From Mobula hypostoma (lineage: Eukaryota), in the NCBI RefSeq assembly GCF_963921235.1, contig NC_086104.1:20956001-21020000 (forward strand): a DNA stretch of 64,000 nucleotides. The letters are read 5' to 3'. How positions within the stretch are numbered: the stretch's first letter is position 1; the number at the start of each line of letters is the position of its first letter. The translations under genes and the position numbers were made by a program. Under the pieces are notes generated by a model that had not been told where the DNA came from, did not search any database, and saw nothing but the letters and a program-made list of their open reading frames with translations. Of the stretch, positions 1,618-50,659 are shown in pieces.

Positions 1618-1782
<165 letters not shown>

Positions 1783-3127
1783 TCACCTGCTCAATCATGC
1801 TCATTTCAGACTCTGTTAGGATCACTTGGTCAGTTCCAGATCTCAATGTAAATTAAGTCCAAGCATGGATAAAGAAACCCAAACTGCAAAGACAGTACAG
1901 GTGGCTGCCACCAGCATTGTGCTGAGTGCAGCATCAAAAGCTTCCAGTAAAATCAAAGACAATGAGGATCAAGGAAAATATCCTGAAGTTACACACTTTG
2001 ATGCTGGATTTTCCACAAAATGCAAGGTTTTGACAATTCATCGCCACTTTGTGGAGAACCTATATTAGGTTGGACTGGGCGCAGGATGTTACTACAGCGT
2101 CTCCACTGCTAGGTGTGGCAAAAGTCTTTATTGATTCCAATGGAGAGGAACTGTTGCAATTTGTTAAATCACATTTTGTTTGTAGTGCTTCAGATTTTAA
2201 ATATAAAAACTATCAACTTCAAATAGTTTCAACAGTACTTCAAAGTTTGAATATTTTTGAATCGAGGCAAGCAATTTATCTGGCTGCTGAAGATTTAATT
2301 TTTATATTTTTGGAGGCAAGGCACATATTTTGCCATATTTGCAACCCATACAACCCCATTAAGCCAGGTCCAGCACCTCACAGTGAGAGATCGTGCCAGT
2401 TCTGATCCACAAATAACTGCACTCTGTCATTATTATCCACAGATTCGCTGTCTGTAGATCTGTGTATTTACAAGGTCAGCCTCAGGCCCCATCTCAATTT
2501 CTGTTCAAATATATCAATGTTAATGTACCCACTGAGGAAACAACTGTGGTTTATACAAATGCAATGATCAGCTTCCAGGCACATGCCAAATGACTTTCTT
2601 CTGTATTCATTACAGAGCGGCTTTTATACACATATGTAACTTAATATTTCAAAAATCAATCACTGTTTGCAACTTTCAAAGGAAATAATTTTGTTAGCTA
2701 ATATTTCCTTTATATATTTGAAGAATTTAACATACATATTAATGCATGCTAAAGCTTCTTGAACATTACAGTGGAGACAGGGTCCTCAGGCAGGATTGAC
2801 ACAAACATGTCAACAATTCTTCCCCTTCCCTCACTTCCTGCTGATGCTGCTCAACACGCCAAGTTCTTTCAAAAGGCAATTGCATTTTTATTTGGAGGTG
2901 TAATGGTTGTAAGGAACTTCTTAGTGGCATATGTGATTTTTGTTTCCGGATATTTGTGCCCCTTTCTCTCACGGATAACAAGGAATTATTTGGTGCTATT
3001 CCCTGACAGGGAAGGACTAACATCATTTAATAGCAAATCGTCATGGTTCACTGAACAGCACAGACTCCCGGGCTAAATCTCTGCATAACAATCACATCTT
3101 TTTTAACTAGCAAGGTTATAATTTTCA

Positions 3128-3433
<306 letters not shown>

Positions 3434-3810
3434 CTATAAATAATAACAACTGTATGTTTAGTTCAAGACAATATTTTCATTCTACCAACAATTTAACTTT
3501 TTTTGAACAATTGACATAAAGGAAGATTATAAAGATTGGAAACAGAACAAAAATTCTTCAGAAGAATCAGAATCAGATTTAGTATCACTGTGAAATATCA
3601 TGAAATTTGTTTTGTGACAGTAGCACAGTACAATACATGGATTCATTGTCCATTCAGAAATCTGATGGCAGAGGGGAAGAAGCTGTTCCTAAAACGTTGA
3701 ATGTGTGTCTTCAAGCTCCCATACCTCCTCCTTGATGGTAACAATGAGAAGACCCCTTGTCCTGGGTGATGGGGGTCCTTAATGATGGATGCAGTTTTTT
3801 TGATCTTGAT

Positions 3811-3890
3811 CAGAGGTTCCCAATCTATTTTATGCCATGGACCCCAACTATTAACCGAGGGGTCTGCAGACCCCAGGTTGGGAACCCATG
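3811..3890. mobile_element. 80-bp hAT-type MITE
   Basis: TIRs CAGAGGTTCCCAA / TTGGGAACCCATG; no clear TSD. Confidence 0.65.
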
Positions 3891-4812
3891 TCCTGAGTAC
3901 TGGGGATGTGTTTGATTTGCCCCCTTTTTATTAGCCATTTGATTATGTCCCCTTGAAGATTTCCTCGATACTGAGGAAAGTATCCAAGATGGAGTTGGCA
4001 ACTTTCTGCAGCCATTTCCAATCCTATGCAGTGGTCCCTCCATACTAGGCAGCAATGCAACCAGTTAGAATGCTCCTCTCAGAAGATCTATAGAAATTTG
4101 CTAGATTCTTTCTTGACATACCAAGTCTCATCGAACTCCTAATGAAATATACCCCCTTTTCATGCCTTCTTTGTAATTGCATCACTATGTTGAGCCCAGG
4201 ACAGGTCTCAGAGATGCTGATACCCAGGAACATGACATTGCTCACCCTTTCCACTGCTGATTCCTTGATGAGGACTGGTGTTGTTTCCTTGACTTCCCCT
4301 TCTTGAAGTCCACATTCCTTAGTCTTACTGATATTGTGTGTAAGCTTGCTGTTGTTATGACACCACTCAACCAGCTGATCTATCTCACTCCTGTATGCCT
4401 CCTTGTCACCATCTGAGAATCTGCCAACAATAGTTGTCATCGGCAAACTTACAGATGGCATTTGAGCTGTGCCTAGCCACACAGTTGTGGGTGTAGAGAG
4501 AGTAGAGCAGTGGGCTAAGCACGCAACCTTGAGCTGCGCTGGTGTTAGTTGTCAGCAAAGAGTTGTTATTTCCAATCCACACTGTCTGTAGTCTCTTGAT
4601 GGGGAAATCAAAGATTCATTTGGAAAGGGAGATACAGAGGTGCAAGTTTTAGAGCTGGTTGATTCATACTGAGGAGATGGTGTTGATCACTGAGCTATAA
4701 TCAATATAATAGCAGTCTGATGTAGATATTCCTATTGTCCAGGTTTTGAGCCAGTGAAATTACATCTGCTGTTGACCTATTGTAGCAGGTCCAGGTCCAT
4801 GACCAACTTCTC

Positions 4813-5131
4813 TTTTTTTTTGGCGTGTGCCTGTGTGTGAGTCTATGCGTGTGCGTCTGCGTGTCTGTGCATGTGTCTGTGATGATGGATTTTTCATGGC
4901 TTTCTTACAAGACGCGGAGCGAGAGAGAGAGAGACTGCGTGGCGCGCCACTTCCCACACAGACATTTTTCACAGCATTTTCCCCTTTGTTTTATGAGGTC
5001 GAGTTGCGATCTCGACACTCAACCCGGCAGGGATGGAAAGCGTACTCGGGGGCAAACCCAACTAGTTTCGAACTCCGGAACCTCCGCTCCCGGGTCTGGC
5101 GCCGATGTCGTTGCGCCACCAGCCGGCCCAT
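4813..5131 (-). mobile_element. Young tRNA-derived SINE with 15-bp TSD
   Basis: TSD CATGACCAACTTCTC at 4798-4812 and 5132-5146; A-box-like TGGCGCAACG, B-box GTTCGAAAC; A9 tail; CpG-rich. Confidence 0.85.
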
Positions 5132-7014
5132 CATGACCAACTTCTCAAAGCACTTCATCAGAGTAGATGTGAGTGCAAATGGGCAATTCACCCTGCTCTT
5201 CTTAGGCACTGGTATGACTGCCACTCTTTAGAAGCTGACAGTAGCAATGAGAAGTTGAAGATATCCTTGAACAATCCCATCATCTAGTTGGCACAAGTTT
5301 TCAGTGACCCACCAGGGTCTGATGCCTTGCAAGGATTTACCCACTAGAAAGATGTTCTGATATCAGCCTCCAAGACAGAGATCACAGGGTTACCAGATGC
5401 TGCAGGGATTCTCCCTTTCAAAGCTTCACAAAAGGCATTGAGCTCATTGAGCAGTGAAGCATCACAGCCATTCAAGTTAGGTTTTGCCTGCAAACTCTTC
5501 CAGAACTGATTCTACTTCTAAACTCCATTAAAATTGTGGTTTTGCTCTTAAATAGATTTCCATAGACTTGACTTCTTGTATAGTTCTGGATCACTGGTGT
5601 TGAATGCTAACAGTTCCCCAGACTGCAAATCACCTGGTTCATAAAGGGGTTTTGGTTTGTGTCTGTCCGGTATGTTCTTGAAGGCACACACACATCCACA
5701 TAAGTCTTGATGAAGTCGGTGACAACTGTGGCATATTCATTTAGATTTGACTATGAATCCCTATATATTGTCTAGTCCACCGATTCAAAACATTCCTGTA
5801 AGCACTCCTCTGCCTCCCTTGTCCATAGCTTCGTGGTCTTCACCACTGGTGCTGCAGTTCTCAGTCTCTGCCTCTACGCTGGGAGTAGAACAGCCAGGTG
5901 ATCAGACTTGCCCAAAGCGCAGATGTGGGATGGCACGTTAAGTGTTCTTGATGGTGGTGTAACAGCAGTCAAGTGGGTTGGCTCCGCTGGTTCCACGGAT
6001 GGTATGTTGGTGGTAGTTGGTCAGAGACTTCAAGCTGGCCTGGTTAAATATCGAATTCTCAGTTTGATCCATACCATGAAAGCAGTAATTGCAAAAATTC
6101 TAGTTTACTATCAAAAGTGCAGTAATAAAATGTAGGTCAGTATTTTAATTCATTCTTAAAAAGATGGACATTACTGCAAGGCTGCATTTATTGCCCAGCT
6201 CTTCTTGCTTAGGAAGATGTCACAGGATTTCATCTAAAATAACTGCAATTTCTGGTGTTAAGGGACAGTCAGAATGCTATGGCATCTGCCCAATAACAAA
6301 GGATTGGCAGTCTGTGTCAAAATTAGTGTTCCACTTGGAGAACTTGGGTGTGGAGGCTGCAGGTTTTGCAAGTGCAGGTTTTGCAAGAGCATCGACCCAT
6401 AACAGCTGCTGATGAACTGCCAATCAAATGGACTGCTTTGTGCTGGATGACAATTATTACAGCTGCATCCATCCAGGCAAGAGCATCATGTACCTTCATA
6501 CTACCAACTTGCTTCTTATAGGTAGAAAGCTTTTGGTAATAAGGAAATTAATCACTTTGTTTAGCTGAAAGATTCAACAAAATCTGCAATAACTCAGATA
6601 GCATATTTTTATGGTGCTACAAAGTATATCTACATCTAACTCAGACTCCCATTACTGAATGATGTGCATTATGCTTCAGGAATAACCGCTGAAAAAATAG
6701 CTTCAGGAACAGCAAAAATTTGTGAAGAAAGACGGGGTGCAATTTCACCTATTCTTTTCATTAATTGGATATTGAGATTTGTACTTAAACTCCCATGTAT
6801 TAGGAAATTTATCAGTATTGAAAATTCAGTTCTAACGGCATACAGTTTTTTGGAGGAAGAATATAAAAAAAATTCTAGATCTTACTTGCAAAAAACTTAG
6901 TTCCAATTAATATATATTGTCCAGTTATTCTGAATTCCTCCACTCGGGAAACACATGCATTTTATCCATCTTATCAATATCCCCATTATTTGCGGATCCA
7001 GAAAGTTTGCATCA

Positions 7015-7281
<267 letters not shown>

Positions 7282-16292: not shown

Positions 16293-16490
<198 letters not shown>

Positions 16491-21000: not shown

Positions 21001-24000
21001 GTGTCGACCCTTAAACCCTGCCTCCCATATAACCCCCCGCCTGAAATTCCTCTATATACCTGTCTAGTAGTCTCTTAAATTTCACCAGTGTATCTGCCTC
21101 CATCACTGACTCAGGCAGTGCATTCCACGCACCAACCACTCTCTGAGTAAAAAACATTCCTCCAATATCGCCCTTGAACTTCCCACCCTTTACCTTAAAG
21201 CCACGTCCTCTTGTATTGAGCAGTGGTGCCCTGGGGAAGAGGCGCTGGCTATCCACTCTATCTATTCCTCTTATTATCTTGCATACCTCTATCATGTCTC
21301 CTCTCATCCTTCTTGTCTCCAAAGAGTAAAGCCCTAGGTCCCTTAATCTCTGATCATAATGCATACTCTCTAAACCAGGCAGCATCCTGGTAAATCTCCT
21401 CTGTACCCTTATCAATGCTTCCACATCCTTCCTTTAGTGAGACGACCAGAACTGGACACAGTACTCCAGGTGTGGCCTAACCAGAGTTCTATAGAACTGC
21501 ATCATTACCTCGCGACTCTTAAACTCTATCCCTCGACTTATGAAAGCTAACACCCCATAAGCCTTAACTACCCTATCCACCTGTGAGGCAACTTTCAGGG
21601 ATCTGTGGACATGTACCCCCAGATCCCTCTGCGCCTTCACACTACCAAGTATCCTGCCATTTACTTTGTACTCTGCCTTGGGAGTTTGTCCTTCCAAAGT
21701 GTACCACCTGACACTTCTCCGGGTTGAACTCCATCTGCTACTTCTCTGCCCACTTCTGCGTCCTATCAATGTCTCTCTGCAATCTTCGACAATCCTCTAC
21801 ACTATCTACAACACCACCAACCTTTGTGTGGTCTGCAAACTTGCCAACCTACCCTTCTACCCCCACATCCAGGTCATTAATAAAAATCACGAAAAGTAGA
21901 GGTCCCAGAACAGATCCTTGTGGGACCCCACTAGTCACAACCCTCCAATCCGAATGTACTCCCTCCACCACGACCTTCTGCCTTCTGCAAGCAAGCCAAT
22001 CCTGAATCCACCTGGCCAAACTTCCCTGGATCCCATGCCTTCTGACTTTCTGAATAAGCCAACCGTGTGAAACTTTGTCAAATGCCTTACTAAAATCCAT
22101 GTAGATCACATCCACTGCACTACCTGGTCACCTCCTCAAAGAACTCTATCAGGCTTGTTAGACACGATCTGCCCTTCACAAAGCCATGCTGACTGTCCCT
22201 GATCAGACCATGATTCTCTAAATGCCTATAGATCCTATCTCTAACAATCTTTTCCAACAGCTTTCCCACCACAGACGTAAGGCTCACTGGTCTATGATTA
22301 CCCAGACTAACCCCACTACCTTTTTTGAACAAGGGGACATCATTTGCCTCCCTCCAATCCTCCAGTACCATTCCCATGGATAACAAGGACATAAAGATCC
22401 TAGCCAGAGGCTCAGCAATCTCTTCTCTCACCTCATGGCGCAGCCTGAGGAATATACCGTCAGGCCCCGGGGACTTATCCATCCTAATGGACTTTAACAA
22501 CTCCAACACCTCCTCTCCCTTAATATCAACATGCTCCAGAACATCAACCTCACTCATACTGTCCTCACCATCAAGTTCCCTCTCATTGGTGAATACCGAA
22601 AAGAAGTATTCATTGAGGACTTTGTTCACTTCCATAGGCTCCAGGCACACCTTCCCACCTTTAATCTCTAATCAGTCCTACCTTCACTCCTATCATCCTT
22701 TTGTTCTTCACATAACTGAAGAATGCCTTGGGGTTTTCTTTTACCCTACTCACCAAGGCCTTCTCATGCCCCCTTCTTGCTCTCCCCAGTCCCTTCTTAA
22801 GCTCCTTTCTTGCTACCCTATATTCCTCAATAGACCCATCTGATCTTTGCTTCCTAAACCTCACGTATGCTGCCTTCTTCCACCTGACTAGATTTTCCAC
22901 CTCACTTGTCACCCTTGGCTCCTTCACCCTACCATTCTTTATCTTCCTCACCAGGACAAATTTATCCCTAACATCCTGCAAGAGATCCCTAAACATCAAC
23001 CACATGTCCATAGTACATTTCCCTGCAAAAACATCATCCCAATTCACACCTGCAAGTTCTAACCTTATACCCCTCATAATTTGCCCTTCCCCAATTAAAA
23101 ATTTTCCTGTCCTCTCTGCTTCTATCCTTTTCCATGACAATGCTAAAGGCCAGAGAGCGGTGGTCACTGTCCCCCAGATGCTCACCCACTGAGAGATCTG
23201 TGACCTGACCCAGTTCATTACCTAATACTGGATCTAGTATGGCATTGCCCCAGTTGGTCTGTCAACATACTGTGACAGAAATCTGTCCTGGACACACTCA
23301 ACAAACTCTGCCCCATCTAAACCATTGGAACTAATCAGGTGCCAATCACTATTAGGGAAGTTGAAGTCACCCATGATAACAACCCTGTTATTTTAGCATT
23401 TTTCCAAAATCTGCCTCCCAATCTGTTCCTCTATCTCTGCTGCTATCAGGGGGCCTGCAGAATATTCCCAATAGAGTAACTGCTCCCTTCCTGTTCCTGA
23501 TTTCCACCCATACTGACTCAGAAGGATCCTGCTACATTCCCCACCCTTTCTGTAGCTGTAATAGTATCCCTGACCAGTAATGCCACCCCTCCTCCCCTTT
23601 CCCCCCCTCTCTATCCCTTTTACAGCACTGAAATCCAGGAATATTGAGAATCCATTCCTACCCTGGTGCCAGCCAAGTCTCTGTAATGGCCACTACATCA
23701 TAATTGCATGTATGTATCCAAGCACTCAGTTCATCACCTTAGTTCCTGATGCTTCTTGCATTGAAGTACACGCACTTTAGCCCTTCTACCTTACTACTTT
23801 TACACCCTTTATTCTGCTTCTCTTTCCTCAAAGCCTCTTTATGTGTTAAATCTGGCTTTACTCCATGTACTATACTTGCAGTTCTTGCATGACCTTTATT
23901 CTCCTCCACCTTACTATCTGCTCTAACACTCTGGTTCCCCTCCCCCTGCAAATCTAGTTTAAACTCCCCGGAGCAGCACTAGCAAACCTTCCCGGAAGGA

Positions 24001-25683: not shown

Positions 25684-28600
25684 TTCTCCCTGTCTCCTGA
25701 CTTTTAGAGACAATTATCTCCCTGAAACTCCTGTCTATTTCTGCCTCTGCCTCACAAATGATCCAAAGTTCATCCAGCTCCAGCTCCCTAACTCAGTTTG
25801 TCAGGAGCTGCAGCTGGATGTATCTTTCACAGGTGTAGTCATCAGGGAAAATTGTGCTCGCCCTGACTTCCCACATATGGCAAATGGAGCACTCGACTGC
25901 CCTAACTGCTGCCTCCATTACCTACTTCTAAGTTAATTAGATTAATTAAAGGATCTTACATGGCCTTACCTCACTAGCAGCAAGCTCGTCCTCAGCCTCT
26001 GCTCGCTGAAGCCTCTCGAGCCAAAGCCTTCCTACTCTGTCTCCCACTACACCGTCGCTCGTTCCATTAATCTGCTCGCTTTTTTAACTCACCCGCTGTT
26101 CTCACAGGCTGACCTTCACGCGCTTGTGCAGTCGTGCCCTGTTCAAACTGCCAAAGAAATGACCTGAAACTTTGTTTAAATTTAAGGAAATCATGCTGAT
26201 TTTGGCCTATTAGATCTTCCAAATATGCTTCCAAGTATCCTGAAACTTCATCCTAATAATGGACTGACAAATCTTACCAATCACTGAAGTCAGATTAACT
26301 GGCCTATAATCTTTTGCCTCCCTATCTTCTAAAAGAGTCGACTGACATTAACAATTTTCCAGTCCTTCTGAACCATTTCTGACTCTGGTGCCTCCACAAT
26401 CTTTTCAGATACCTCTTTCAAAACACAAGGGTATAGTCTCCCTTGAGACCTTTGCTTCCCAAACACTTTCTCCTTATTAGTAGTGACTACACTCACTTCT
26501 GCTCCAAACCTCCTGATTTTCTGGCTGGTCTTCTACAATAAAGATTGATGCAAAATACTAGTTCAGTTCGTCTGCCACTCTTTGTTTCCCCACTACTATT
26601 TTTCCAACAGTCCAACATACACTCTTGCTTCTCTTACTCCGTAATACTGATACACCTGATTTTAGCTTCCTCGGCATTCCTTTACACCTTAAGCTCCCTA
26701 ATCAAATATGATTATTGTATAACATCAAATCCAGAATTGCCTTTTCCTTAGTGGGCTCGATCACAAGCTGCTCTAAAAAGGCATCCCATAGGCATTCTGC
26801 AAATAAATACCTCCCTTAGGATCTAGTGCCAATCTAATTTCCCTAGTCTTCTTAGATACTGAAGTCCCCATGATCACCACAACATTGCCTTTCCTGTTAT
26901 AATTTGTACCTTACATTCAGGGGGAGTTTTCACCCTTGCAGTTTCTTAACCTACCTAAAAGAAATCTATAATCTTCCAATCCTGTGCTACTTCTTGCTAA
27001 GGATTTGATTTCTTTTTTTTAAACCAACAGACCCACCACACCCTCACTGTCCACCTGGCTGTCATTTTGATCGGATGTGTAGACTTGGATGTTTAATTCC
27101 CAGATGTGATCTTTCAGCAATGACTGAAGCCCACAATGTCATATTGCCAATTTCAAAATATGCTATAAAAGCTCATCTACTCTGTTTGTACACCATGTGC
27201 ATTCAAATTTCACAATTTCAGTCCCATATTCACCTGTTCTCTTATCTTTGCACAACTACAAAATTCAGGAAGTTTAACTTATGACACAATTATGGTTTGC
27301 TTGTTTATTCAGATATTCTATCTAATTTAATTTGCAAAATAGAGGCTTGCAAGTAAAGCTGGTGTATTAGCAACATTAGCGAATATTAGTCCTGCCAAAA
27401 AGAACCTGGTGAGGCAACCCGGATCCAAAATACTTTATTCTTCACCTACTTGTCTGCTCATCATGATTCTCAAATTTGTGCTTCTGCATTTCAGATATTA
27501 TCATTGCAAATCGTCTCTGGTCATTCACTGAAGCTTTTCCAAGTGGTGACCGCAACAGTATGCAAGACTCTAGTGTGGTCCAAACAAAGTTAGACTCAAG
27601 TTGATCATAAATTTCCCTGATGTATTACAACTGTTTTTTTCAAGTGACAACATAATTTAAAGTGAAAATTGAAGAGCTATTGCCCCCACTGTATGTGGTA
27701 AGAGTTGCATCCGTCTTACTTCAGATAACGTTGTTTAGTAATAGCTAATTTTCATCTTGTGTTAATCTTTCCATCTGATCAGGATTATAGTATAGTATTT
27801 GAAATACATTAATGACACTTACACAACAGTATAAGTAGTTATTTTATTTTGGTATTGGGAGACTTCCCCATCAGTTCCAATTAATATGAACTTACTTCGG
27901 GAATGCCCAAATTCATCTGGGAACTGATCAAAACAACTTTGCATGTGGCTATTATTTCATTCAGTTTTTGCTACTTGCTTATCTAAGAAGCCATTAAAGA
28001 AAATGTAATTTTAAATTATAAAACACAATGAATTGAATTAATTTTCACTTCTTCACAATTCATAACAATTCGTTTCCTTTAACCATGACCACTCTTGCCT
28101 CCTACCCTCCCTCATCAGCATAATCAATCCCCATGAAATCAGATTGCACACATTTCACAGTGACCTCTTTGATCATGGGTTAAATCTAACAATAGCCCAC
28201 AAAAAAAAATGTTATAGCTCAAGTACTAAAGCTCGTGAACACTGGCAGCCTACAACGATGGATGAGGCAGATCTAGTGTTTCTGAGAATCTACTCAGGAA
28301 AACAGCACACTTGAAGGAAGGTGTAATAATTTTAGATCTCAATCTCGTTATCCTCTACACCCAAATTAAATGACTATCCCAAGAGGAACACTGGAAGAAT
28401 AAGCTATTTAGAAGTAACAAGGAAATAGCACGAAGATTAGAGCACAAGCAAAACCTAGTTCTGCATTTTGTAGGAATTATTGCACATAGATATGTCAGAC
28501 ATTCATCTTTAATAATATTGTGTGAGCTCATATGTAGGGATATCCAAAAGTAAGGCATTGTTTGTATCACTAGAAACAAAATTGCTACACTGCTGCTCAA

Positions 28601-28972
28601 TGTTATCATAGTGCCAAAAGTATCTACAATTGTTTCTCCCTCTGTTACAATATCAGTAAAGTTTGTCATAAAGTGATGCCACCATGTGGAGGTATTATTA
28701 TGGAATGGAAACTGATTTCAAAGTTCAAAGCAAATTTTATTATCAATGTACGTAAGTATACATCAGTAAATACACAGCAGCACACAAAATGCATAGTGTA
28801 ACACAAACCAGGATTGCATCACCTCGGTTAAAGTGGAGACAGCCATCTTAACTATTTGAATTGAGCATGTCAGTGTTTTAAGCATTTAGAGTTTCATCAT
28901 AATATGCTGTGTTGTATGATGAGGGAGATCATGATCTTTGGTAATGATTGTTCTTAACAAATTTTTCTGCAG

Positions 28973-29340
28973 AAGTTGTTTGCCGACAGTCTGCCGCCGG
29001 GACGCGGAGCGTGTTGTGTCGGGTCGGCGCCGCGGTGCCAAGCGGAGAACGGTGGCAGAATAGCGAGCGATCGGCGGCTTTCCCCACGATTGTGTCCGTC
29101 ACGCCCTCAACAGTGGATGTATTTCGAATATCTTCGGTGCGACATTGGGTACAGGCGATGGTCAATCCCAACTCTGCCTCTGCGAAGTGATCGGGCTTCT
29201 GTGAAATCGGTTCGTGTCTGGCTGGGCAAGTGATGCCTATTCATTCCTGCCCACTGGCTGTTGGAGGGGAGCGGTAAATTGTGGGGAGACTGTTTTCTTC
29301 GGCGAAGTGGTATCAGTGTTAGTAAGGCCCCAGTGTTACC
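28973..29340 (+). promoter_or_regulatory. CpG-rich 5' leader of the PAQR gene behind a candidate splice acceptor
   Basis: ttcttaac...tttttctgcag| ends at 28972, followed by a sharp switch to CpG-dense sequence. Confidence 0.5.
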
Positions 29341-30399
29341 ATGACGACCGTGGTGATGGAACAGATTGGTAGACTCTTCATCAATATCCAGCAGATCCGT
29401 CAGATCCCAAGCCTGGTGGAGCAGTCCATTCCCAGCCTGCCGTGCACCGTGAAGGATTGGGAGGTGCCGCGGATATTCCGGGAGCCGTACATCCACTCTG
29501 GCTACAGACCGGTGGAGCAGAGCTGGCGATACTACCTGTTCACCTTGTTCCTGCGGCACAACGAGTCCATCAATGTCTGGTCCCACCTCTTCGCTGCGCT
29601 GATCATCCTCCTGAAGCTGCAGGAGTTCTCCCGGACGGTGGACTTCTGGTCGGACCGGCACGCGTTGCCACTGCTGATCCTCCTCCTCTCTGCCTTCTGC
29701 TACCTGACCTGCAGCTCCCTTGCCCACCTCCTGCATGCCCGTTCGGAGCTCGCCCATTATTCCTTTTTCTTTGTGGACTACATCGGTGTGGCGGTCTATC
29801 AGTATGGGAGTGCTTTGGTCCACTATTACTACTCCATTGAAGAGGAGTGGTACCACGTCATCAAAATGTTCTACCTCCCCATGGCCACCTTGTTGGCTTG
29901 GATGTCCTGTTTAGGATCCTGCTATGCAAAATCTAATGCCAAGTTGCTGCACCCTTGGTCACGCAAACTCTACCAGATAGTCCCAGCCGGGCTGGCCTAC
30001 ATGTTGGACATCAGCCCTGTGGTGCATCGGATATATAGCTGCTACTCGTCGAATTGCACTGACACTGCCATTTGGTACCACCAATGCCAGATCATCTGCT
30101 TCCTCGCAAGTGCTCACTTCTTCTCGTGTCCTCACCCAGAGAAGTGGCTCCCCGGAAAATGCGACATCTTCCTGCAGGGGCATCAGATTTTCCATGCCTT
30201 TATGGTCCTCTGCACCCTGGCCCAATTGGAAGCTATCCATCTGGATTACAAACACCGGCAGCATTTCTATCAGACGTGGCATAGCGACTCCACCTGCTCT
30301 GTGCTGCTCTGTCTCGCAGTGATCGTTTCCTCCAGCGTTGTCACTGCCGTTTACATGAGGCACCTCATCAAAATCAAACTCGGCCTCAAGGAGAAGTGA
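29341..30399 (+). CDS. PAQR7: Membrane progestin receptor alpha-like (PAQR7/paqr7b type), 352 aa, intronless, nested in YIPF4 intron 1
   Basis: Intact ORF with accATG Kozak context; N-terminus MTTVVMEQIGRLFIN closely resembles teleost mPR-alpha; PAQR motifs EPYIHSGYR, HNESINVWSH, SSLAH, DYIG, PEKWLPGKCDI, HQIFH; multiple hydrophobic segments. Family is secure; PAQR7 versus PAQR8 orthology needs a tree. Confidence 0.88.
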   Translation: MTTVVMEQIGRLFINIQQIRQIPSLVEQSIPSLPCTVKDWEVPRIFREPYIHSGYRPVEQSWRYYLFTLFLRHNESINVWSHLFAALIILLKLQEFSRTVDFWSDRHALPLLILLLSAFCYLTCSSLAHLLHARSELAHYSFFFVDYIGVAVYQYGSALVHYYYSIEEEWYHVIKMFYLPMATLLAWMSCLGSCYAKSNAKLLHPWSRKLYQIVPAGLAYMLDISPVVHRIYSCYSSNCTDTAIWYHQCQIICFLASAHFFSCPHPEKWLPGKCDIFLQGHQIFHAFMVLCTLAQLEAIHLDYKHRQHFYQTWHSDSTCSVLLCLAVIVSSSVVTAVYMRHLIKIKLGLKEK

Positions 30400-32754
30400 A
30401 GATGGGTGCTTCTCAATCCAGCATCTCACCTATCGTGAATATACCATTCATTGGGGAGTGGCGGAAGGGTAGCGGAAAAACTGACTCTGGTTTCCAGCTG
30501 GCAGTGGACTCTGTGCCTGGGAGTTCGATTCTTGGACTGAAATCAACAATGATTTCTACGGCATTTTCACATGAGACTGGCCGTGATTTTTGGCAAGCAT
30601 CAAGGACGTGCAAGGATTTGTCAAATACTGTAATACTGAATGCCTTATATCTTTACATAGCACCTACCTTGTAATTGGTGAATTTGTTCAGTTGGCACCT
30701 GTTCAAGCAGAGCAGGGCCAAGCGTGGTCATGACTCCCTGCGGAGCAGAGTTGGCCAATGAGTAACTGCTAGCTTCTGGTATCTTTATCCTTTCCGGTTC
30801 TGATAAATTTGAAACAGTTACTGTGTTTCTCTTTGAACATGATTTGAGATTAGTGGAATTTATAATATCCAAAGTTTACATTGAATGCACTACACAATGA
30901 CGTTGGTTGATGCTGAGAAAGTCATTGATCTAAATCAACATCAAAAGCCAATATCTGGATGTGCAAGGATATGAAGTATATCAGTGTTACAGAGCTGTGG
31001 CTGATGTGGAGATAATCAGTGCTGTCCACGTGTTAAAAGGTGTACTGCAGTAAAGAATTAATCTATCATATCTCCCAGACCAGAATGCTCTCAATTATCA
31101 GTTCCATTCCAGCCCTTTCTATTCACTCCCTGAACCACTGAATAGCTTTTGGCGATGTTCTATATACCTGTATTTCCTGATCAGTGCCATGATAGTGTAA
31201 TGCTTAGCCCGACGCTATTCCAGCTCGGGGCGTTGGAGTTTGGAGTTCAATTCCACTGTCATCTGTAAGGAGTTTGTATGTCCTCCCTGTGGAATGCGTA
31301 GTTTTCCTCCAGGTCCGCTGGTTCCCGCCCATAGTCCAAAGACGTACCGGTTAGTAGGTTAATTGATCATTGTAGATTGTCCTGCGTTTAGGCTGGGATT
31401 AAGTTGGGGGTTGCTGGGCAGAGTGGCTTGAAGAGCCTATCCCTGAATAAATAAATGAAATCAGTAGAAGGAGACCATTTGGTTCAAGTCTACATTGGCA
31501 CTCAGACTAATCCCAGCCACCACTGTTTTTCTCTGTTACTTATCCTCCCACGTTTCCTTCAGCTTCTCCCATCCCCTCCCCAATTTTATCATGTGTGTAA
31601 GAACTAGGGGCAGTTTGGCCGGGTAACCTACCAAATTGCACATTTCTTAGGATGAGGGAGGAATCAGGAGCATCTGAAGGAAACCCATGTGGTCACAGGG
31701 AAAATGTCAGATTCCACACAAAGTTCTCAGCGGAGCTGTCAGTCACCATGAGACTACAGGTTTGATCTGGCTTGTCTCAGCTCTCTGTGTATTCATTATC
31801 ACAGGAGGTAGTTGGACGTTTTAAACAACTTCCCTGCTCTGTAAATAATGCCATAGGATATTTAACATGCACCTGTGCAAACAATGTTGGTCATTGGATA
31901 GCTCTGATCCTGGCCGACAACTCTTCAGATAGTTGGTGCCTGCCCTTGCCAAACATTACACATTGGTATTACTGATGGTTGACTCTTGAGAACTATCGAG
32001 GCTGTCCAAATGTGAAAGAACATTTTCTGTCTGTGTAATGTTGTGCTCCTCAAGTTCAAAGTCAATTTTGGAAAATTATGTATTTCGATGGCATGCCAGG
32101 ATTAAACACTTCCCGTGTAATTATGGTCACTTGGTGTTTTGCCTCCTGCCAAGTCTGAACTGTGCCGGAAACCTTCCCTGTCGGTTCCATGTACAACAGT
32201 TGCTGCTTCTGTGGCTCGTGAAGAAAAGATTGGAGGTGCAAACGATTATAAAGTAGCAAAAATGGAAGCTTGTGTATGTCTGCTTTAGTGACGTGGGTTG
32301 AGAGCTGTCAGTCTGTTTCCCTTGAAATAAATGTCATTAAATTTTCTGTGTTCACCTGAGTTTACAGCACATCCAGAAAATGTGTGGTCTGGGGTATCAC
32401 GCAAATTTTTTTTTAAAGTAATGGGCTGAAACAGGAGTGCATCCAGCTAAGCCATGAAGGACAACCACCCAAGAGCAGAAACCGCTTGCTGGATACAGCG
32501 CACATAATGTTCAGTTGACCTCATTGTTCACAAAGAGTGAAAGGTTACGCTGAACAACTCCTCTGCTGTTTTTTTTCCCCTTGTTGCACTGTTTTGCAAT
32601 ACTCCCGCTATGATATTGGAAAGGAAGATGATCTTTGTGGTTGCCTTCTATTTCCAACTGTTGGGGAGAAGGGGTGAAGCTCTGGGTGTAATTGACTGAG
32701 GCAGCACTGTTTATGAAGCAAAACTTTCAGCCTTTCAACATGTGTACCCATGCA

Positions 32755-32760
32755 AATAAA
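32755..32760 (+). terminator. Candidate PAQR polyadenylation signal
   Basis: AATAAA, then an A10 run 16 nt later and GT-rich sequence. Confidence 0.4.
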
Positions 32761-33801
32761 ATCATATTCAATGTTTAAAAAAAAAAGTTGTTTGCCATTG
32801 CCTTCTTCCGAGCAGTGTCTTTACAAGATAGGTGACCCCAGCCATTATCAATACTGTTCAGAGATTATCTGCCTGGTGTCAGTGGTCGCACAACCAGGAC
32901 TTGTGATATGCCCCAGCGGCTCATTCGACCATCCACCACCTGCTCCCATAGCTTCATATGACCCTGATCAGTGATTGGGGGTGGGGGTGGGGGTTCTAAG
33001 CAGGTGCTACACCTTGCCCAAGGGTGACTTGCAGGCTAGCGGAGGGTAGGAGTGCTTACACCTTCTTTGGCAGAGACGCATCGCCACCTGGCATTCGAAT
33101 TTCAGCATAGCCCACTCAGGGTAAATTTCACAGTAAAAGCTTCAATAACTAAAAAGGACATTAATAAATTATTGGAACAGTAGTATGTTTAAAATAAAAA
33201 TCATTCAGTGAAAAATCCCAAATGAAACTTAGAATTCCCATTTTTTCTATAAATTTAAATTAATTCCCTCAATCTGCATGTGTACCATGCACATGCATAG
33301 TTTCTTGTATAACAGTTATCAGCCAGACGAGTCACAGATGACATTTTTATGATTGTGGCAGTGGTGTCAGAGATTTGCACAGCAGAGATACAGGTCTTTT
33401 TGCCTAGGGTGTCTGTGCCAGCCGTCATGCCTAGCTATACCAATCCCACTTGCCTACATTAACTTCCTAGCTATGTCCTTCTCATTCAAGCTGAGACTTC
33501 ATTATTGTTACTGTCCCTGCCTCCTCCACCGAATTCTGTCAGCTCTGTTAGAAATTCTACTGTGTGAAAAATTTACTGTTCAAATTCTCTTTGAACTTTC
33601 TCATTTCATATTAAACCTATACTCTCTTGTTTTGGAAACCTCTTACCATAGGAAACAGGTTCTGGCAATCACCCTAATGTCTCTGATATTTTATACACTT
33701 CCATCATGTCACCTCTTAGGCTCTTTTTGTCTAAGGAAAACAGAGCCAGTCTATCTAGTCTCTCATGTAACTCAAGCCCCCCAATCCAGGCAGCAGACTG
33801 A

Positions 33802-34171
33802 GTAGAGTACCAACACAAAGCCTGTGTACAAGGTCCAGAGTCGTACAGTACCAACACAAAGCCCGTGTACAAGGGCCAGAGTCGTACAGTACCAACACAA
33901 AGCCCGTGCACAAGGGCCAGAGTCGTAGAGTACCAACACAAAGCCCGTGTACAAGGGCCAGAGTCGTACAGTACCAACACAAAGCCCGTGCACAAGGGCC
34001 AGAGTCGTAGAGTACCAACACAAAGCCCGTGTACAAGGGCCAGAGTCGTAGAGTACCAACACAAAGCCCGTGTACAAGGGCCAGAGTCGTAGAGTACCAA
34101 CACAAAGCCTGTGTACAAGGGCCAGAGTCGTAGAGTACCAACACAAAGCATGTGCACAAGGGCCAGAGTCG
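33802..34171. repeat. 41-bp minisatellite, 9 copies
   Basis: Unit AGTACCAACACAAAGCCCGTGYACAAGGGCCAGAGTCGTAS starts at 33806, 33847, 33888 ... 34134; no spacers. Confidence 0.97.
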
Positions 34172-34720
34172 CCTGCACTTTCTGAGGGGACTGAGGTCCT
34201 TTGGAGTATGCAGCTCTCTCCTTCACATGTTCTACCAGTCTGTTGTCGCCAGTACAATCTTCTATATGGTGGTGTGTTGTGGCAATGGCATCAACATGGG
34301 TGATACCAACAGGCTCAATAAACTGATTAGAAAGGCTGGGCTCTATTAGCAGAGTCAAACTGAACACACTGGAGGCTGTGGAAGAACAAAGGACCCCACG
34401 GAAAAGCCAGACAATTCTAGACAATGCTTCTTACCCTCTGCATGCCACCTTGGCTGAATAGAGGAGTACTTTTAGTAATAGACTAAGACAACTGCACTGC
34501 TCCAAAGAGCACTGTACGATGTCATTCTTACTCTTGGTCATTAGGCTCTACAATGAGTCAACCTATAGCCTGGGAAGTGATGACCCCTCCTGTAAGATTG
34601 TTTGAGGTGGCTTTTCTTTTCTTTCTTACTTCTCTTCTAATATTTGTATATCTATGCACTTGCAATGCTACTGTGACATGTTAATTTCCTTTGGAATCAA
34701 TGAAGTATCTATCATTTATT
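34134..34720 (+). mobile_element. LINE (Rex-Babar/L2-like) 3' fragment
   Basis: KGQSRLHFLRGLRSFGVCSSLLHMFYQSVVASTIFY. Confidence 0.75.
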
Positions 34721-38459: not shown

Positions 38460-39325
38460 CAGTTGGCCCTCCTTATCCGCCAGTACCGCATGCGCGAATT
38501 CAACCAACCGCGAATTGAGAAAACCCAGAAGTGCTCTTCCAGCACTTGCTGTTCNNNNNNNNNNNNNNNNNNNNNNNNNNNNNNNNNNNNNNNNNNNNNN
38601 NNNNNNNNNNNNNNNNNNNNNNNNNNNNNNNNNNNNNNNNNNNNNNNNNNNNNNNNNNNNNNNNNNNNNNNNNNNNNNNNNNNNNNNNNNNNNNNNNNNN
38701 NNNNNNNNNNGAAAAAAAAATGGGAGTTCTCTTACTAAGTAAGTTGGAACAGGTACATCTGGTATTATTTAGTGTCAGCTAGTCAAACGTTTGTCTTAGT
38801 ATATAGTATATATTTTACCTTTCTATGCATATAAAATACTTAAGAAATGTACGTTTCAGCGCTGGGCTCGGGAACAGAAGTTCCCGAGTTTGATCTAGTG
38901 ACAGATCGTTCCCGAGTGCACTGTCCATCCCTGCCAGGTTGATGTGGAGGATCAAAAATCCAAAACCCCAAAACCCAATAATTAAACCACTGCGTTGCTT
39001 AGTAATAATTGTAGCTTTAATCGGGCAGGGCCTTTCTAGTTTTATCCTTTAAAATTGTTCCGGTCGTTGCCCAACTGCAGCCTAACGCTTCTTCAATGAC
39101 CGATGGTGTTTCACCTCTTTCTGATTGCTTTATTATTTCCACTATATTTTAAACTGCAATCGTGATTATTTTCGTGAACAGAAACACTGCGGATTCAGAG
39201 CTCTGCCACCGAGTCCAAGGTCCACTGCATTGAGACAGGTTGAATAAGGAACTTGAGCATCTGCGTTTTTTGGTATCTGCGAGGGGTCCCGGAACCAATC
39301 CCTCGCGGATAAGGAGGGCCGACTG
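38460..39325. mobile_element. Tigger/pogo-type non-autonomous element spanning the assembly gap
   Basis: TA followed by TIR CAGTTGGCCCTCCTTATCCGC; matching right TIR GCGGATAAGGAGGGCCGACTG. Confidence 0.8.
38555..38710. other. Assembly gap, 156 N
   Basis: Run of N. Confidence 1.
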
Positions 39326-44487: not shown

Positions 44488-44563
44488 CTTCACCGTCGGC
44501 CGAAGAGACGAAGGTGAAATCCCCGTTGTTGGCAGCAAAGTGCTGCCGCTGCAGGCCGCTCAT
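44488..44563 (-). CDS. YIPF4: YIPF4 coding exon 1 (MSGLQRQHFAANNGDFTFVSSADGE)
   Basis: ATG in gcgccATG context; NGDFTFVSSAD matches the YIPF4 N-terminus as I recall it; donor G|GTAGGC; 76 nt, phase 1. Confidence 0.93.
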
Positions 44564-44906
44564 GGCGCCGGCTCGGCTTGAGCGCCGCTGACTGCGAGGG
44601 CCGGGACTCCGGAGCGGCGCGAGCACCCGCCGTTCACCGCCTCCCCCCCACTCGATGCCCGTGCACCCACCGACTCCGCCAACGTCACTCAACTACTCTG
44701 CGATCCCGATCCGCCGTCATTGCCGGGGCCACTAAGCACGCCGGGAAAAGTACAAACCCCGCCCCCAACGGGGGGAAAAAAAGGAGCCAGAGAGCATTCT
44801 GGTTGGGCGCTACCTTGGCCTATCGGAATCGACCTTCATCAAATTTGACTCCCCCAAATTTGGCGGTAAATGGTGATGGCTTTTTAAATGTCTGCCTGGC
44901 TTTCAG
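44564..44906. promoter_or_regulatory. Bidirectional CpG-rich promoter of YIPF4/EXO1, with a putative non-coding EXO1 exon ending at 44906
   Basis: CpG-dense; GC box CCCCGCCCC ~44757; E2F-type TTTGGCGG at 44859-44866; plus-strand donor CAG|GTGAGT at 44906/44907. Confidence 0.75.
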
Positions 44907-45380
44907 GTGAGTTTATACATATCAAAAAATTACCCTTCTCGTCCCGGGCTGCTAGAGAGTGGAATAAATGCCTAAGAGACTAGGGCTAGGCGTAGAAATG
45001 AGGCTGGGTAAAATATTTGCTGTCAGTTTAAACTGCTAAATCATCTTGTTTTCGGCCCGAGCTCCGGACAAGGGTAAGATTATGGCGGGCAGCTGCAAGG
45101 GCATGGAAGAGGGGTCCGGGGCTGAATAAGAGTGGAAGCTTTTCTACCTTAAAGCGAAGTTTCTGAAGGCTTCGTCAGATCTGAATGGGAACAAATTTCA
45201 ACGTTCATTAATGAAGGGGGAATCCGATTTAAAATTGAATCGACGTAAATTACTTCTTTAATATTACTGATATATGTGAATTAAAAACTCTAGTTTTCTT
45301 GCCGTTTTGTGTGTGTATATATTTCCATAAGTTTTGGCCATTTATGTACCTATTGCACCATAATTGAAGACAAAGCTTCA

Positions 45381-46350
45381 GAACCTTTTGTAATTACCTG
45401 TTTTTCTGCATAAATTACTCATAAAATGTGGTCTGATCTTCATCTGAGTTACAATAATAGACAAACATAATCTGCCTAAACTAATAACACACAAAAATTG
45501 TATGTACTTTTCATGTCTTTATTGAAAACATTGTTCAACCTTTAACAATCCAGGCTGGAAAACAGTATGTGAACCCTTGTATTTAATAACTGGTAGAACA
45601 TGCTTTAGCAGCAATAACTTTCATCAAATGTTTCCTGTAGCTGCTGATCAAACTTGCACAATGGCAAGGAGGAATTTTAGACCATTCTTCCATATAAAAC
45701 TGTTCAGTTCATCAACGTTTCTGGATTATCTTGTATGAACAGCCCTCTTCAGGTCATACCACTGCATCTCAATTGGTTAAGGTCTGGACTCTGACTTGGC
45801 CATTCCAAAACACAAATTTTCTTTTTAAACAGTTCTGATGCTGATTTACTCTTGTCACAGATCTTTGTCTTGCTGCATTATCCAACTTCTATTAAGCTTC
45901 AGGTGACAGACCACTACTCTACATTCTCCTGTAGAATGTCTTGATACAATTTTGAATTCATTGTTCCCTCAACGATTGCAAGCTGTCCAGGCCCTGAGGC
46001 AGCAAAGCAGCCCCAAACCACGATGCTCCTTCCACCATGCTTCGCAGTTGCGATGAGGTTTTGGTGTTGGTGTGCAGTGCCCCTTTTCCTCCAAACAGTT
46101 CAACTTTTGTTTCATCTGTTCACAGAACATTGTTTCCGAAGCATTGTGGAACATCCAGATGTTTTTTTGCAAACTTGAGACTGTGATTATTTAAATGGTG
46201 TACTCAGCATTGATGAGAAAAAGTACAATTGTCTGTACGTTATTAGTTTAGGTAGATTGTGTTTGTCTATTATTGTGACTTGGATGAAGATCAGACCACT
46301 TTTCATGAGTAATTAATGCAGAAAACCAGGTAATTGCAAAGGGTTCATAA
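45381..46350 (-). mobile_element. Tc1/mariner remnant in the EXO1 5' intron
   Basis: ~125-bp terminal inverted repeats; transposase remnants KHGGRSIVVWGCFAASGPG and WPSQSPDLN. Confidence 0.88.
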
Positions 46351-46953
46351 ATGGTGAGTTCCTACCTTTGCTTGTTTGAGAATCATCCCTTAATTCATAC
46401 TTTTAATTTTGTAACTAAACACCATTTTAACATCTGAGTTTTATTTCCACATAGTTGCAATATTCCTGCAAGCAAGAATGCAGATGGCTGCGCTATTATC
46501 CTAGCAATCAAGTTTGATCTCTGCATTGCAATTATTTTTGAGATTGAATGTATAGGTATATTTGAAGAGCAGGCATCCTTTACTTATTGTTGGAGAAGTT
46601 GTCTTACTCTTACCTGGAGAAGTTGCTGTAGGTCGTTTACTCTTCTCTACGTTTAGACTTTATTAAGTAAAACTGTCATTTAGTTTATTATTCACTGTGA
46701 ATCATGCATCTGCGTCTCCTTCGGCTTACACTCTGTCCCAATAAGTTTTGTGATTTTTACATCTATGCTTCAGAGTCTCTTCACAGTTTAACCACTTGTT
46801 TGTGCTGCAGTCCTTTTGAATTCATGAATAATACCTCGGTGATTTCATCTGTCACTCCTTGATTTAAAACTAACATTTACTTTCTGAATCACAGCTCATC
46901 CATTTTAACCTGAGAACACTAATGAAAGATTTTGAGAAGAGAAAAGTCACACC

Positions 46954-48373: not shown

Positions 48374-48492
48374 GTAAGTATAATTCAGTCCGAATATTAA
48401 CATCTAGAAGATACAGATTATTTTTTAAACTGAACAGCTGTTTGTCCATGTGGTTTAGAAACATTATGCTTTGGTGATTTTCTGCATTACAG

Positions 48493-48616
48493 ACGTAGGC
48501 AAACAAACTTGCAGAAAGGGAAGCAGCTCCTACGTGAAGGCAAGACAGCAGAAGCCAGAGAGTGCTTTACTCGCTCTGTCAGTATAACACCTGCAATGGC
48601 TCGTGAGGTTATAAAG
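48493..48616 (+). CDS. EXO1: EXO1 coding exon 3 ([41 protein letters not shown])
   Basis: Helical-arch region; cag|...|gtgagt; 124 nt; frame consistent. Confidence 0.96.
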
Positions 48617-48731
48617 GTGAGTGACCTCCATTTTATTTTGCCTGTGGTTTGTGCAGAAAACAAGTTGCTTCCAAATTATCTTTATATCCTACTGATTTTC
48701 TTACTTTTAAAAATGTTTAAATAATAAATTG

Positions 48732-50657: not shown

Positions 50658-50659
50658 GA

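What the first reader, a model, noticed from the sequence alone, without database searches (positions are those of the whole stretch)
28973..32790. Intact membrane progestin receptor gene nested antisense inside YIPF4 intron 1
Seen: a complete 352-aa PAQR ORF with conserved SxxxH, ExxNxxxH and HxxxH motifs lies on the plus strand between YIPF4 exon 2 (16459) and exon 1 (44488). Known: mPR-alpha mediates non-genomic progestin signalling such as oocyte maturation, and human PAQR7, PAQR8, YIPF4 and EXO1 are not neighbours. Inference: this is either an ancestral location for the fish-type mPR-alpha, a distinct paralogue, or a lineage-specific relocation. Overlap with a housekeeping transcription unit could couple or interfere with its expression. 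I cannot tell whether the arrangement has already been reported.
Basis: partly seen in the sequence, partly recalled or inferred. Interest (0 to 1): 0.75.

Follow-up and report, generated by a model that had tools for sequence, protein, structure and literature searches.

The report
Young retrocopy of progestin receptor gene
The intact membrane progestin receptor gene inside the YIPF4 intron is real, but it is a recent reverse-transcribed copy of the devil ray's own mPR-alpha (paqr7) messenger RNA, whose original gene still sits on another chromosome. This is an ordinary kind of gene duplicate, and it has not been shown to be used.

Summary
A 352-aa PAQR reading frame (29341-30399, +) lies antisense in YIPF4 intron 1 (16461-44488).

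It is neither an ancestral location nor an old paralogue. It is a young processed retrocopy of the paqr7 gene that NCBI names 'mPR alpha-B'. The evidence:
- **Parent retained.** The same assembly holds a 99.7%-identical gene on a 40.7-Mb chromosome. Every other ray and shark checked has its single copy on a 33-45-Mb chromosome, and where YIPF4 was placed it lies elsewhere.
- **Intron removed.** Similarity to the parental loci of sawfish, electric ray and sevengill shark starts at 29311-29314. That is where those genes have a splice acceptor; the window has exon-like sequence instead.
- **Poly(A) end.** Similarity to sawfish stops at the cleavage site after AATAAA (32755), followed by a run of ten A.
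- **Target-site duplication.** The 12-nt word AAGTTGTTTGCC flanks the unit (28973-28984 and 32785-32796).
- **Not shared.** No nested PAQR gene is called in the YIPF4 loci of Mobula birostris or Hypanus, and the sevengill shark locus has none by tblastn.

The RNA-like contigs differ from the window at 25 bases and one indel (0.67%). They encode exactly the parent's protein, so they show the parent's expression. Two runs do cross the copy's 5' junction, strand unknown. On its own lineage the copy has one conservative replacement (V77I) and one silent change. Function is therefore unproven.

The parts
28973..28984 (+). 5' copy of the target-site duplication AAGTTGTTTGCC
   Evidence: It is the only complex word of 9 nt or more shared between 28000-29340 and 32740-32900, and its second copy lies flush with the A-run. 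The flank 28788-28984 belongs to a repeat with about tenfold excess depth in the DNA run.
28985..29309 (+). 5'UTR part derived from the parent's upstream non-coding exon(s)
   Evidence: GC 59%, CpG observed/expected 1.1. It has no similarity to the 10 kb upstream of the coding exon in Pristis, Narcine or Heptranchias. Those loci have a polypyrimidine tract plus AG acceptor at this point instead. RNA-like contigs run colinear through it.
29310..29340 (+). 5'UTR part belonging to the parent's coding exon; the exon-exon joint lies at about 29309/29311
   Evidence: Similarity to L007, L001 and L006 begins at 29311-29314, about 31-34 nt before the ATG.
29341..30399 (+). Intact CDS of 352 aa, mPR-alpha (paqr7) type, with the derived residue I77
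   Evidence: It differs by 1 aa (V77I) from P0280 of the same assembly and by 2 aa from the M. birostris protein P0281.
30400..32776 (+). 3'UTR with the AATAAA signal at 32755-32760; it includes a repeat at about 31167-31465 that is absent from the Pristis 3'UTR
   Evidence: It is colinear with the Pristis parental 3'UTR (30881-31166 and 31466-32781 against L007 11651-13343), and the similarity stops at the cleavage site. RNA-like contigs end at 32750-32774.
32777..32786 (+). Remnant poly(A) tail (A10); the last two A overlap the repeat word
   Evidence: The Pristis genomic sequence continues differently after the cleavage site.
32785..32796 (+). 3' copy of the target-site duplication
   Evidence: It is followed by a very high-copy repeat (32797-33121).
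44489..44563 (-). YIPF4 exon 1 (host gene)
   Evidence: tblastn: 25/25 identical to Mobula YIPF4 P0259.
16305..16460 (-). YIPF4 exon 2 (host gene)
   Evidence: tblastn: 52/52 identical to P0259.
1621..7209 (-). YIPF4 exons 3 to 6 (7036-7209, 3140-3433 holding two exons, 1621-1788)
48434..48721 (+). Exon of the EXO1-type gene, head to head with YIPF4
   Evidence: Stop-free segment. An XPG_N/XPG_I gene of 833 aa is listed divergent from YIPF4 in the same assembly.

Best explanation
The unit 28985-32786 is a full-length processed retrocopy of the devil ray's own paqr7 mRNA (mPR-alpha; NCBI name 'membrane progestin receptor alpha-B'). A spliced, polyadenylated transcript of the parent gene was reverse-transcribed. 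The parent lies on a 40.7-Mb chromosome of the same assembly. The enzyme was most likely a LINE endonuclease/reverse transcriptase, which is inferred. The copy was inserted at a staggered break inside a repeat in intron 1 of YIPF4, antisense to the host. The staggered break left a 12-nt target-site duplication. The event is recent. The copy differs by about 0.67% from the parent-type mRNA. It is closer to this species' parent than to the gene of a related species, and no intact second copy is annotated in Mobula birostris. The ORF is intact and would encode a normal seven-helix PAQR with one conservative change (V77I, inside the ExxNxxxH motif). Nothing yet shows that the copy makes protein or is under selection. 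The most likely state is a neutral, young retrocopy that is at most weakly transcribed.
For: (1) Two copies in one assembly. The window protein P0273 lies on the 162,150,189-bp contig of GCA_963921235.1. P0280, 99.7% identical, lies on a 40,695,526-bp contig of the same assembly.
(2) Other cartilaginous fishes have one copy, on a 33-45-Mb chromosome. Where YIPF4 was placed, it lies on a different, larger chromosome.
(3) No nested HlyIII gene is called in the YIPF4 loci of M. birostris and Hypanus. Heptranchias intron 1 is 6.5 kb with no PAQR by tblastn.
(4) Intron loss. Similarity to the Pristis, Narcine and Heptranchias parental loci begins at 29311-29314, where all three have a polypyrimidine tract plus AG. 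The window has GC-rich exon-like sequence there.
(5) Similarity to Pristis is colinear through the whole 3'UTR and ends at the cleavage site after AATAAA, followed by A10.
(6) The 12-nt direct repeat lies flush with the A-run. Only 40 of 5000 shuffles gave a word of 11 nt or more, most plausibly A-rich words (not examined).
(7) mRNA-type contigs lie colinear on 28969-32774 without joints.
(8) A DNA contig bridges the 5' junction at single-copy depth (9.3), while the body has depth 17.1. At 29142 both letters are present at about equal depth, 8.9 and 10.8.
(9) A DNA contig from elsewhere joins 28961-28982 to a diverged version of 32797 onward. This looks like an uninterrupted copy of the repeat that was hit.
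Against: The parent locus of this species could not be read, because the assembly file was too large. The missing intron is therefore shown only by comparison with three other species, and the parent's first exon was not found within their 10-kb flanks. Absence from M. birostris and Hypanus rests on gene tables, not DNA. The DNA runs that support the junction probably come from the specimen that was assembled. The cleavage site preceding the repeat (CAG/AAG) is not the classic TT/AAAA site of mammalian L1.
Confidence: 0.9

Rival explanations
1. The copy is already a working retrogene. It is transcribed from its own or a recruited promoter on the plus strand and translated into a second mPR-alpha, kept by selection.
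For: The ORF and all PAQR motifs are intact. The 5'UTR part is CpG-rich. RNA-like contigs in X6 and X5 extend 67 and 16 nt beyond the 5' junction with no mismatch. Junction-spanning words are held by these two runs. Unique intron flanks (28000-28393, 33122-33900) have no RNA contigs. Simple host pre-mRNA read-through is therefore not the obvious source.
Against: At all 25 diagnostic sites the RNA contigs carry only the parent's letters, and they encode exactly P0280. The strand is unknown. At 0.67% divergence an intact ORF is expected by chance. The copy's own lineage has 1 replacement and 1 silent change, which is compatible with neutrality.
Confidence: 0.15
2. This is the ancestral or orthologous position of mPR-alpha in cartilaginous fishes, or a distinct old paralogue retained there.
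For: In the tree the chondrichthyan 'alpha-B' clade is separate from the bony-vertebrate PAQR7 clade. Bony fishes have paqr7b next to stathmin, which is not in this window.
Against: The window copy sits inside Mobula at 99.4-99.7% protein identity. The conserved chondrichthyan gene is on another chromosome in every species checked, including this one. The shark YIPF4 intron is empty.
Confidence: 0.01
3. This is a DNA-level segmental duplication or translocation of the paqr7 gene into the intron.
For: A duplicate on another chromosome is also what a DNA transposition would give.
Against: The limits coincide with mRNA ends. The 5'UTR intron acceptor present in three parental loci is replaced by exon-like sequence. 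There is an A-run exactly at the cleavage site and a 12-nt target-site duplication.
Confidence: 0.03
4. This is an assembly artefact: transcript or cDNA sequence wrongly placed, or a misjoin near the gap.
For: There is a gap at 38555-38710. The supporting DNA runs may be from the assembled specimen.
Against: A target-site duplication is not produced by misassembly. A short-read contig crosses the 5' junction at single-copy depth. The copy has its own diagnostic letters, distinct from the mRNA. The gap is 5.7 kb away.
Confidence: 0.03

Closest known systems
Processed retrocopies and retrogenes made by LINE machinery (as catalogued for mammals, e.g. PMC4772013, PMC5470649)
   Same: It is an intron-less copy of a spliced mRNA. 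It has a poly(A) remnant at the parental cleavage site and a short target-site duplication. The parent is retained on another chromosome, and the copy sits inside an intron of an unrelated gene.
   Different: The host is a devil ray, and the responsible element is unknown. The cut site is not the mammalian L1 consensus. The parent has only a 5'UTR intron, so the coding region alone cannot reveal the retro-origin.
PAQR7 / mPR-alpha (fish paqr7b, 'membrane progestin receptor alpha-B')
   Same: It has the full-length HlyIII/PAQR domain and all signature motifs. It is 99.7% identical to this species' annotated alpha-B, 56-59% to bony-fish paqr7b and 52-56% to tetrapod PAQR7.
   Different: It is a second, lineage-specific copy at a new site, carrying V77I. 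Progestin binding and signalling were not tested here.
Bony-vertebrate PAQR7 locus (stathmin-paqr7b adjacency in a cyprinid and in Amia)
   Same: It belongs to the same gene lineage by phylogeny.
   Different: There is no stathmin within the 64-kb window. This site is YIPF4 intron 1, beside EXO1.

Membership tests
PAQR / HlyIII family (Pfam PF03006) | Full-length match to the family profile above the curated cut-off | tested here: met
   181 bits against a cut-off of 26.2; residues 71-295 match profile positions 2-223 of 224.
PAQR / HlyIII family (Pfam PF03006) | Signature motifs that hold the metal-binding His/Asp residues (ExxNxxxH, SxxxH, HxxxH) | tested here: met
   ESINVWSH at 75, SSLAH at 125, HQIFH at 281. 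Aligned to AdipoR1 and AdipoR2 chains.
mPR-alpha (PAQR7) subfamily | Placement with PAQR7 orthologues rather than PAQR8 in a tree | tested here: met
   The window lies within the starred chondrichthyan 'alpha-B' clade, apart from the PAQR8 clade, which has a stem of 0.56. No PAQR5, 6 or 9 outgroup was included, so the root is assumed.
mPR-alpha (PAQR7) subfamily | Specific progestin binding and rapid signalling | not testable with these tools
   Needs a binding or signalling assay.
Processed retrocopy | Parental intron(s) absent | tested here: met
   The acceptor (polypyrimidine tract plus AG) lies about 34 nt before the ATG in Pristis, Narcine and Heptranchias. The window has exon-like sequence there, and mRNA-type contigs are colinear with it. 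The species' own parent locus could not be read.
Processed retrocopy | Poly(A) tract at the parental cleavage site | tested here: met
   AATAAA at 32755, similarity to Pristis ends at 32781, A10 at 32777-32786.
Processed retrocopy | Target-site duplication flanking the unit | tested here: met
   12/12 nt at 28973-28984 and 32785-32796.
Processed retrocopy | Parent gene elsewhere in the same genome | tested here: met
   P0280 lies on a 40.7-Mb contig of GCA_963921235.1.
Processed retrocopy | Empty orthologous site in relatives | tested here: inconclusive
   The site is empty in Heptranchias DNA. For M. birostris and Hypanus there are only gene tables without a nested gene. Junction words were not found in runs of the related organism B, but only 2 words were sampled.
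Functional retrogene | Transcription of the copy itself | tested here: inconclusive
   Junction-crossing RNA-like contigs occur in 2 runs, but all diagnostic sites show the parent's letters and the strand is unknown.
Functional retrogene | Purifying selection on the copy | tested here: inconclusive
   The copy's lineage has 1 replacement and 1 silent change. The parent's lineage has 0 and 3. These are too few to test.

The most novel reading that the evidence does not exclude
The retrocopy is a newborn, functional second mPR-alpha gene of one devil-ray lineage. On this reading it is transcribed on the plus strand from a promoter picked up in the YIPF4 intron, or from its inherited CpG-rich leader. 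That would give progestin signalling a new expression domain, or set up sense-antisense interplay with the housekeeping host YIPF4.
Probability: 0.12. Interest if true: 0.45.

Novelty: new member of a known kind. Interest (0 to 1): 0.25.

Why it matters
It corrects a tempting misreading. The nesting says nothing about the ancestral position of mPR-alpha in vertebrates. The copy is listed as a protein by public sources, and the parent has no coding-exon intron. Automated orthology and synteny analyses could therefore mistake this copy for the true paqr7 of the species, and RNA-seq mapping will split reads between two 99.3%-identical loci. It is also a clean, datable example of poly(A)-type mRNA retroposition in an elasmobranch: full length, with a perfect target-site duplication. 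Beyond that it is an ordinary young retrocopy.

Tried and rejected
(1) I first read the RNA-like contigs as proof that the nested gene is expressed. I rejected this: their 25 differences from the window reproduce the parent protein P0280 exactly.

(2) I considered the acceptor-like ttttctgcag just before 28973 as the start of a coding exon with an upstream UTR exon. I rejected it. No RNA contig shows a joint there, one contig runs straight through it, and the 12-nt word is repeated after the A-run.

(3) I looked for other uninterrupted copies of the flanking repeat in the window. There were none.

(4) I looked for stathmin or other bony-fish paqr7b neighbours in the window. There were none.

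(5) I looked for YIPF4 exons in the Narcine and cyprinid paqr7 loci. There were none.

(6) I looked for the parent's first exon within 10 kb upstream in Pristis, Narcine and Heptranchias. Nothing was significant.

(7) DNA of the Mobula, Hypanus and Scyliorhinus loci could not be fetched, because the files were too large. The coelacanth protein was not on record.

(8) Literature searches for paqr7b with yipf4, mPRAL1/2, Mobula with retrocopy terms, and PAQR7 with retroposition terms found nothing specific. The lamprey PR paper gives no PAQR7 synteny for cartilaginous fishes.

The N run was left untouched.
Full report
**1. What is in the sequence**

The ORF listing gives a 352-aa ATG-to-stop frame at 29341-30399 on the plus strand. 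It matches Pfam HlyIII/PAQR over the whole profile (E 3e-53). It aligns with the solved adiponectin receptors 1 and 2. It carries ExxNxxxH (residue 75), SxxxH (125), PExxxPG (266) and HxxxH (281).

YIPF4 proteins obtained from the databases map by tblastn to the minus strand:
- exon 1 at 44489-44563
- exon 2 at 16305-16460
- exon 3 at 7036-7209
- further exons at 3140-3433 and 1621-1788

Intron 1 is therefore 16461-44488, and the PAQR frame lies in it, antisense. An EXO1-type exon follows at 48434-48721 (+). The only N run is 38555-38710.

**2. Which PAQR it is**

The best database relatives are elasmobranch proteins named 'membrane progestin receptor alpha-B'. Next come bony-fish paqr7b (56-59% identity), tetrapod PAQR7, actinopterygian paqr7a and PAQR8.

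A 65-protein maximum-likelihood tree was built (quick search, SH-aLRT support only, root assumed). It puts the window in a starred chondrichthyan clade. That clade is separate from the bony-vertebrate PAQR7 clade (tetrapod PAQR7 plus actinopterygian 7a and 7b) and from the long-stemmed PAQR8 clade. If the root lies on the PAQR8 stem, the chondrichthyan gene is the PAQR7 (mPR-alpha) orthologue.

**3. Where the gene lives in other species**

In a cyprinid and in Amia, paqr7b lies 3-4 kb downstream of a stathmin gene. From my own knowledge, this is also the human STMN1-PAQR7 arrangement. The window has no stathmin.

| Species | alpha-B contig (bp) | YIPF4 contig (bp) |
|---|---|---|
| Heptranchias | 45,031,497 | 92,458,575 |
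| Heterodontus | 65,096,992 | 120,885,548 |
| Narcine | 179,661,875 | 321,486,706 |
| Pristis | 38,352,228 | 144,684,616 |
| Leucoraja | 32,980,643 | 75,805,852 |
| Amblyraja | 36,920,888 | 83,634,287 |
| Rhinoraja | 32,836,569 | 70,679,918 |
| Hemitrygon | 40,552,631 | 186,194,804 |
| Hypanus | 41,651,412 | 112,262,883 |

In every cartilaginous fish in this table, alpha-B and YIPF4 are on different chromosomes. The Heptranchias YIPF4 locus (L005) has a 6.5-kb intron 1 and no PAQR-like sequence by tblastn. It keeps the head-to-head EXO1 neighbour. The nesting is therefore not ancestral.

**4. Two copies in one genome**

The window's YIPF4 exons 1 and 2 are 100% identical to Mobula YIPF4. Looking up that protein returns two assemblies.
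- In GCA_963921235.1 (contig 162,150,189 bp), a 352-aa HlyIII gene is listed antisense inside YIPF4, 14,164-15,222 bp from the YIPF4 start. These are exactly the window's offsets, so the window comes from this assembly.
- In GCA_030028105.1 the YIPF4 locus has no such gene, and neither does the Hypanus locus.

The exact-sequence look-up shows that the window protein (P0273) shares a cluster with two other Mobula proteins:
- 'alpha-B [Mobula hypostoma]' (P0280, contig 40,695,526 bp)
- 'alpha-B [Mobula birostris]' (P0281, contig 40,474,110 bp)

One search places P0280 in GCA_963921235.1, the window's own assembly. One search places P0281 in GCA_030028105.1. P0273 is 99.7% identical to P0280 (one difference, I77 against V77) and 99.4% to P0281. 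It is 96.6% identical to the Hypanus protein and 90.3% to the Pristis protein. The devil-ray genome thus has the conserved gene on its roughly 40-Mb chromosome plus this near-identical extra copy.

**5. How the extra copy arose**

*Target-site duplication.* AAGTTGTTTGCC occurs at 28973-28984 and again at 32785-32796, flush with a run of ten A (32777-32786). The A-run follows AATAAA (32755) by about 20 nt.

*3' end.* The Pristis parental locus (L007) aligns colinearly with the window from 29311 through the coding region and the whole 3'UTR. The alignment stops at 32781, the cleavage site. After that point Pristis continues with unrelated genomic sequence, whereas the window has the A-run.

*5' end.* Similarity to Pristis, Narcine and Heptranchias begins at 29311-29314. 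Immediately upstream, all three parents have a polypyrimidine tract ending in AG, a standard 3' splice site about 34 nt before the ATG. The window instead continues with 325 nt of GC-rich, CpG-rich (observed/expected 1.1) exon-like sequence. The 5'UTR intron of the parent has therefore been removed.

*Colinear with mRNA.* mRNA-type contigs from three RNA-like runs lie on 28918/28969/29004-31291 and 31336-32750/32774 without any joint.

Four signs together define a processed retrocopy: a spliced leader, poly(A) at the parental cleavage site, a target-site duplication, and a parent retained on another chromosome.

The flanks are repeats: about tenfold excess depth on the left, and about 10^4-fold on the right. 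One DNA contig from elsewhere joins 28961-28982 directly to a diverged version of 32797 onward. This fits an insertion into one copy of a repeat family. Which reverse transcriptase did the work is inferred, not shown. The cut site (CAG/AAG) is not the mammalian L1 consensus. Earlier notes of this scan report other retrocopies in this genome; I did not check them.

**6. Age**

The RNA-like contigs differ from the window at 25 positions plus one 1-nt indel over about 3.74 kb, which is 0.67%. From the shares of 31-mers held, my own calculation gives these divergences:

| Source | Share of 31-mers | Approximate divergence |
|---|---|---|
| RNA-like runs of the window's species | 0.77 | 0.8% |
| Related organism B | 0.60 | 1.6% |
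| Related organism C | 0.43 | 2.7% |

The copy is closer to its own species' gene than to that of relative B. This suggests an origin after those lineages split. Junction-spanning words were found only in runs of the window's species. That search sampled only two words, so it is weak evidence.

**7. Is the copy used?**

Applying the five coding differences seen in the RNA contigs turns the window protein into exactly P0280, the parent. The contigs therefore report the parent's mRNA.

They do not exclude expression of the copy, because contigs drop minority variants. In addition, the X6 and X5 contigs extend 67 and 16 nt beyond the 5' junction without mismatch. Junction words are also held by these two runs. 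Unique intron sequence at 28000-28393 and 33122-33900 has no RNA contig. So some transcription crosses the junction, but its strand is unknown.

I polarised the coding differences with Narcine and Heptranchias as outgroups.
- The copy's lineage has one replacement (V77I, an x position of ExxNxxxH) and one silent change.
- The parent's lineage has three silent changes.

This is what a neutral young copy beside a constrained parent would give, but the counts are too small to test.

**8. Reality of the insertion**

- A DNA contig (28725-29022, no mismatch) bridges the 5' junction at depth 9.3, like the unique flanks (about 10).
- The body has depth 17.1.
- At 29142 both the window's and the parent's letters are present, at 8.9 and 10.8.

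This is as expected for two loci collapsed in a short-read assembly. These runs probably come from the assembled specimen, so they are not independent of it.

**9. Verdict**

The interpretation needs replacing: this is a lineage-specific, very young, full-length processed retrocopy of paqr7, inserted antisense into YIPF4 intron 1. It is not an ancestral location or an old paralogue.

I found no paper describing it, but the kind of event is commonplace. Its practical importance lies in annotation, orthology and synteny inference, and read mapping.

The most interesting reading still open is a newborn functional mPR-alpha retrogene. I give it roughly 0.12-0.15 (0.15 for the rival reading, 0.12 for the most novel version).

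Noticed in passing
window 44489-48721; L005 1-10087: YIPF4 and an EXO1-type gene (XPG_N/XPG_I) lie head to head in the window, in Heptranchias, in both Mobula assemblies and in Hypanus. From my own knowledge the two genes are on different chromosomes in human, so this is a conserved chondrichthyan arrangement.
   Followed up: partly
contig lengths: In Heptranchias, Heterodontus, Narcine, Rhinoraja and Pristis, YIPF4 is on a contig of the same length as the PAQR8-like ('beta-like') gene. This suggests chromosome-level linkage of YIPF4 with PAQR8, not PAQR7.
   Followed up: no
tree; L002, L003: Actinopterygian paqr7a and paqr7b both include sturgeon, gar and Amia, so the split predates teleosts. 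Both Amia genes are on contigs of the same length (38,047,193 bp). Stathmin lies 3-4 kb upstream of paqr7b in Amia and a cyprinid.
   Followed up: partly
window 32797-33121 and 28591-28787: These are very high-copy repeats. Summed contig depth in the DNA run is about 1.1-1.2 x 10^5 and 6.7 x 10^3, against about 10 for unique sequence. No tRNA-like head was found, and the family was not identified.
   Followed up: no
window 31167-31465: A repeat lies inside the 3'UTR of the copy, and of the parent mRNA judging by the RNA contigs. It is absent from the Pristis 3'UTR, though related copies occur elsewhere in the Pristis locus.
   Followed up: no
window 33672-34430: Overlapping long minus-strand frames repeat a peptide unit of about 33 aa (…LALVHGLCVGTLRLWPL…), which points to a tandem repeat of about 99 nt.
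   Followed up: no
window 12272-13474, 20619-23221, 50607-54936, 57293-59020: Long stop-free stretches here look like reverse-transcriptase or integrase frames of LINE and LTR-type elements. The zone 20-28 kb has strongly negative GC skew.
   Followed up: no
window 31678-32781 (DNA run X1, record 7): This is a 1723-nt DNA contig. Its first 1104 nt lie on the window up to 32781, inside the A-run. The remaining 619 nt are not listed on the laid stretch. They could be the parent's downstream genomic sequence or a repeat path; I could not read the contig.
   Followed up: no
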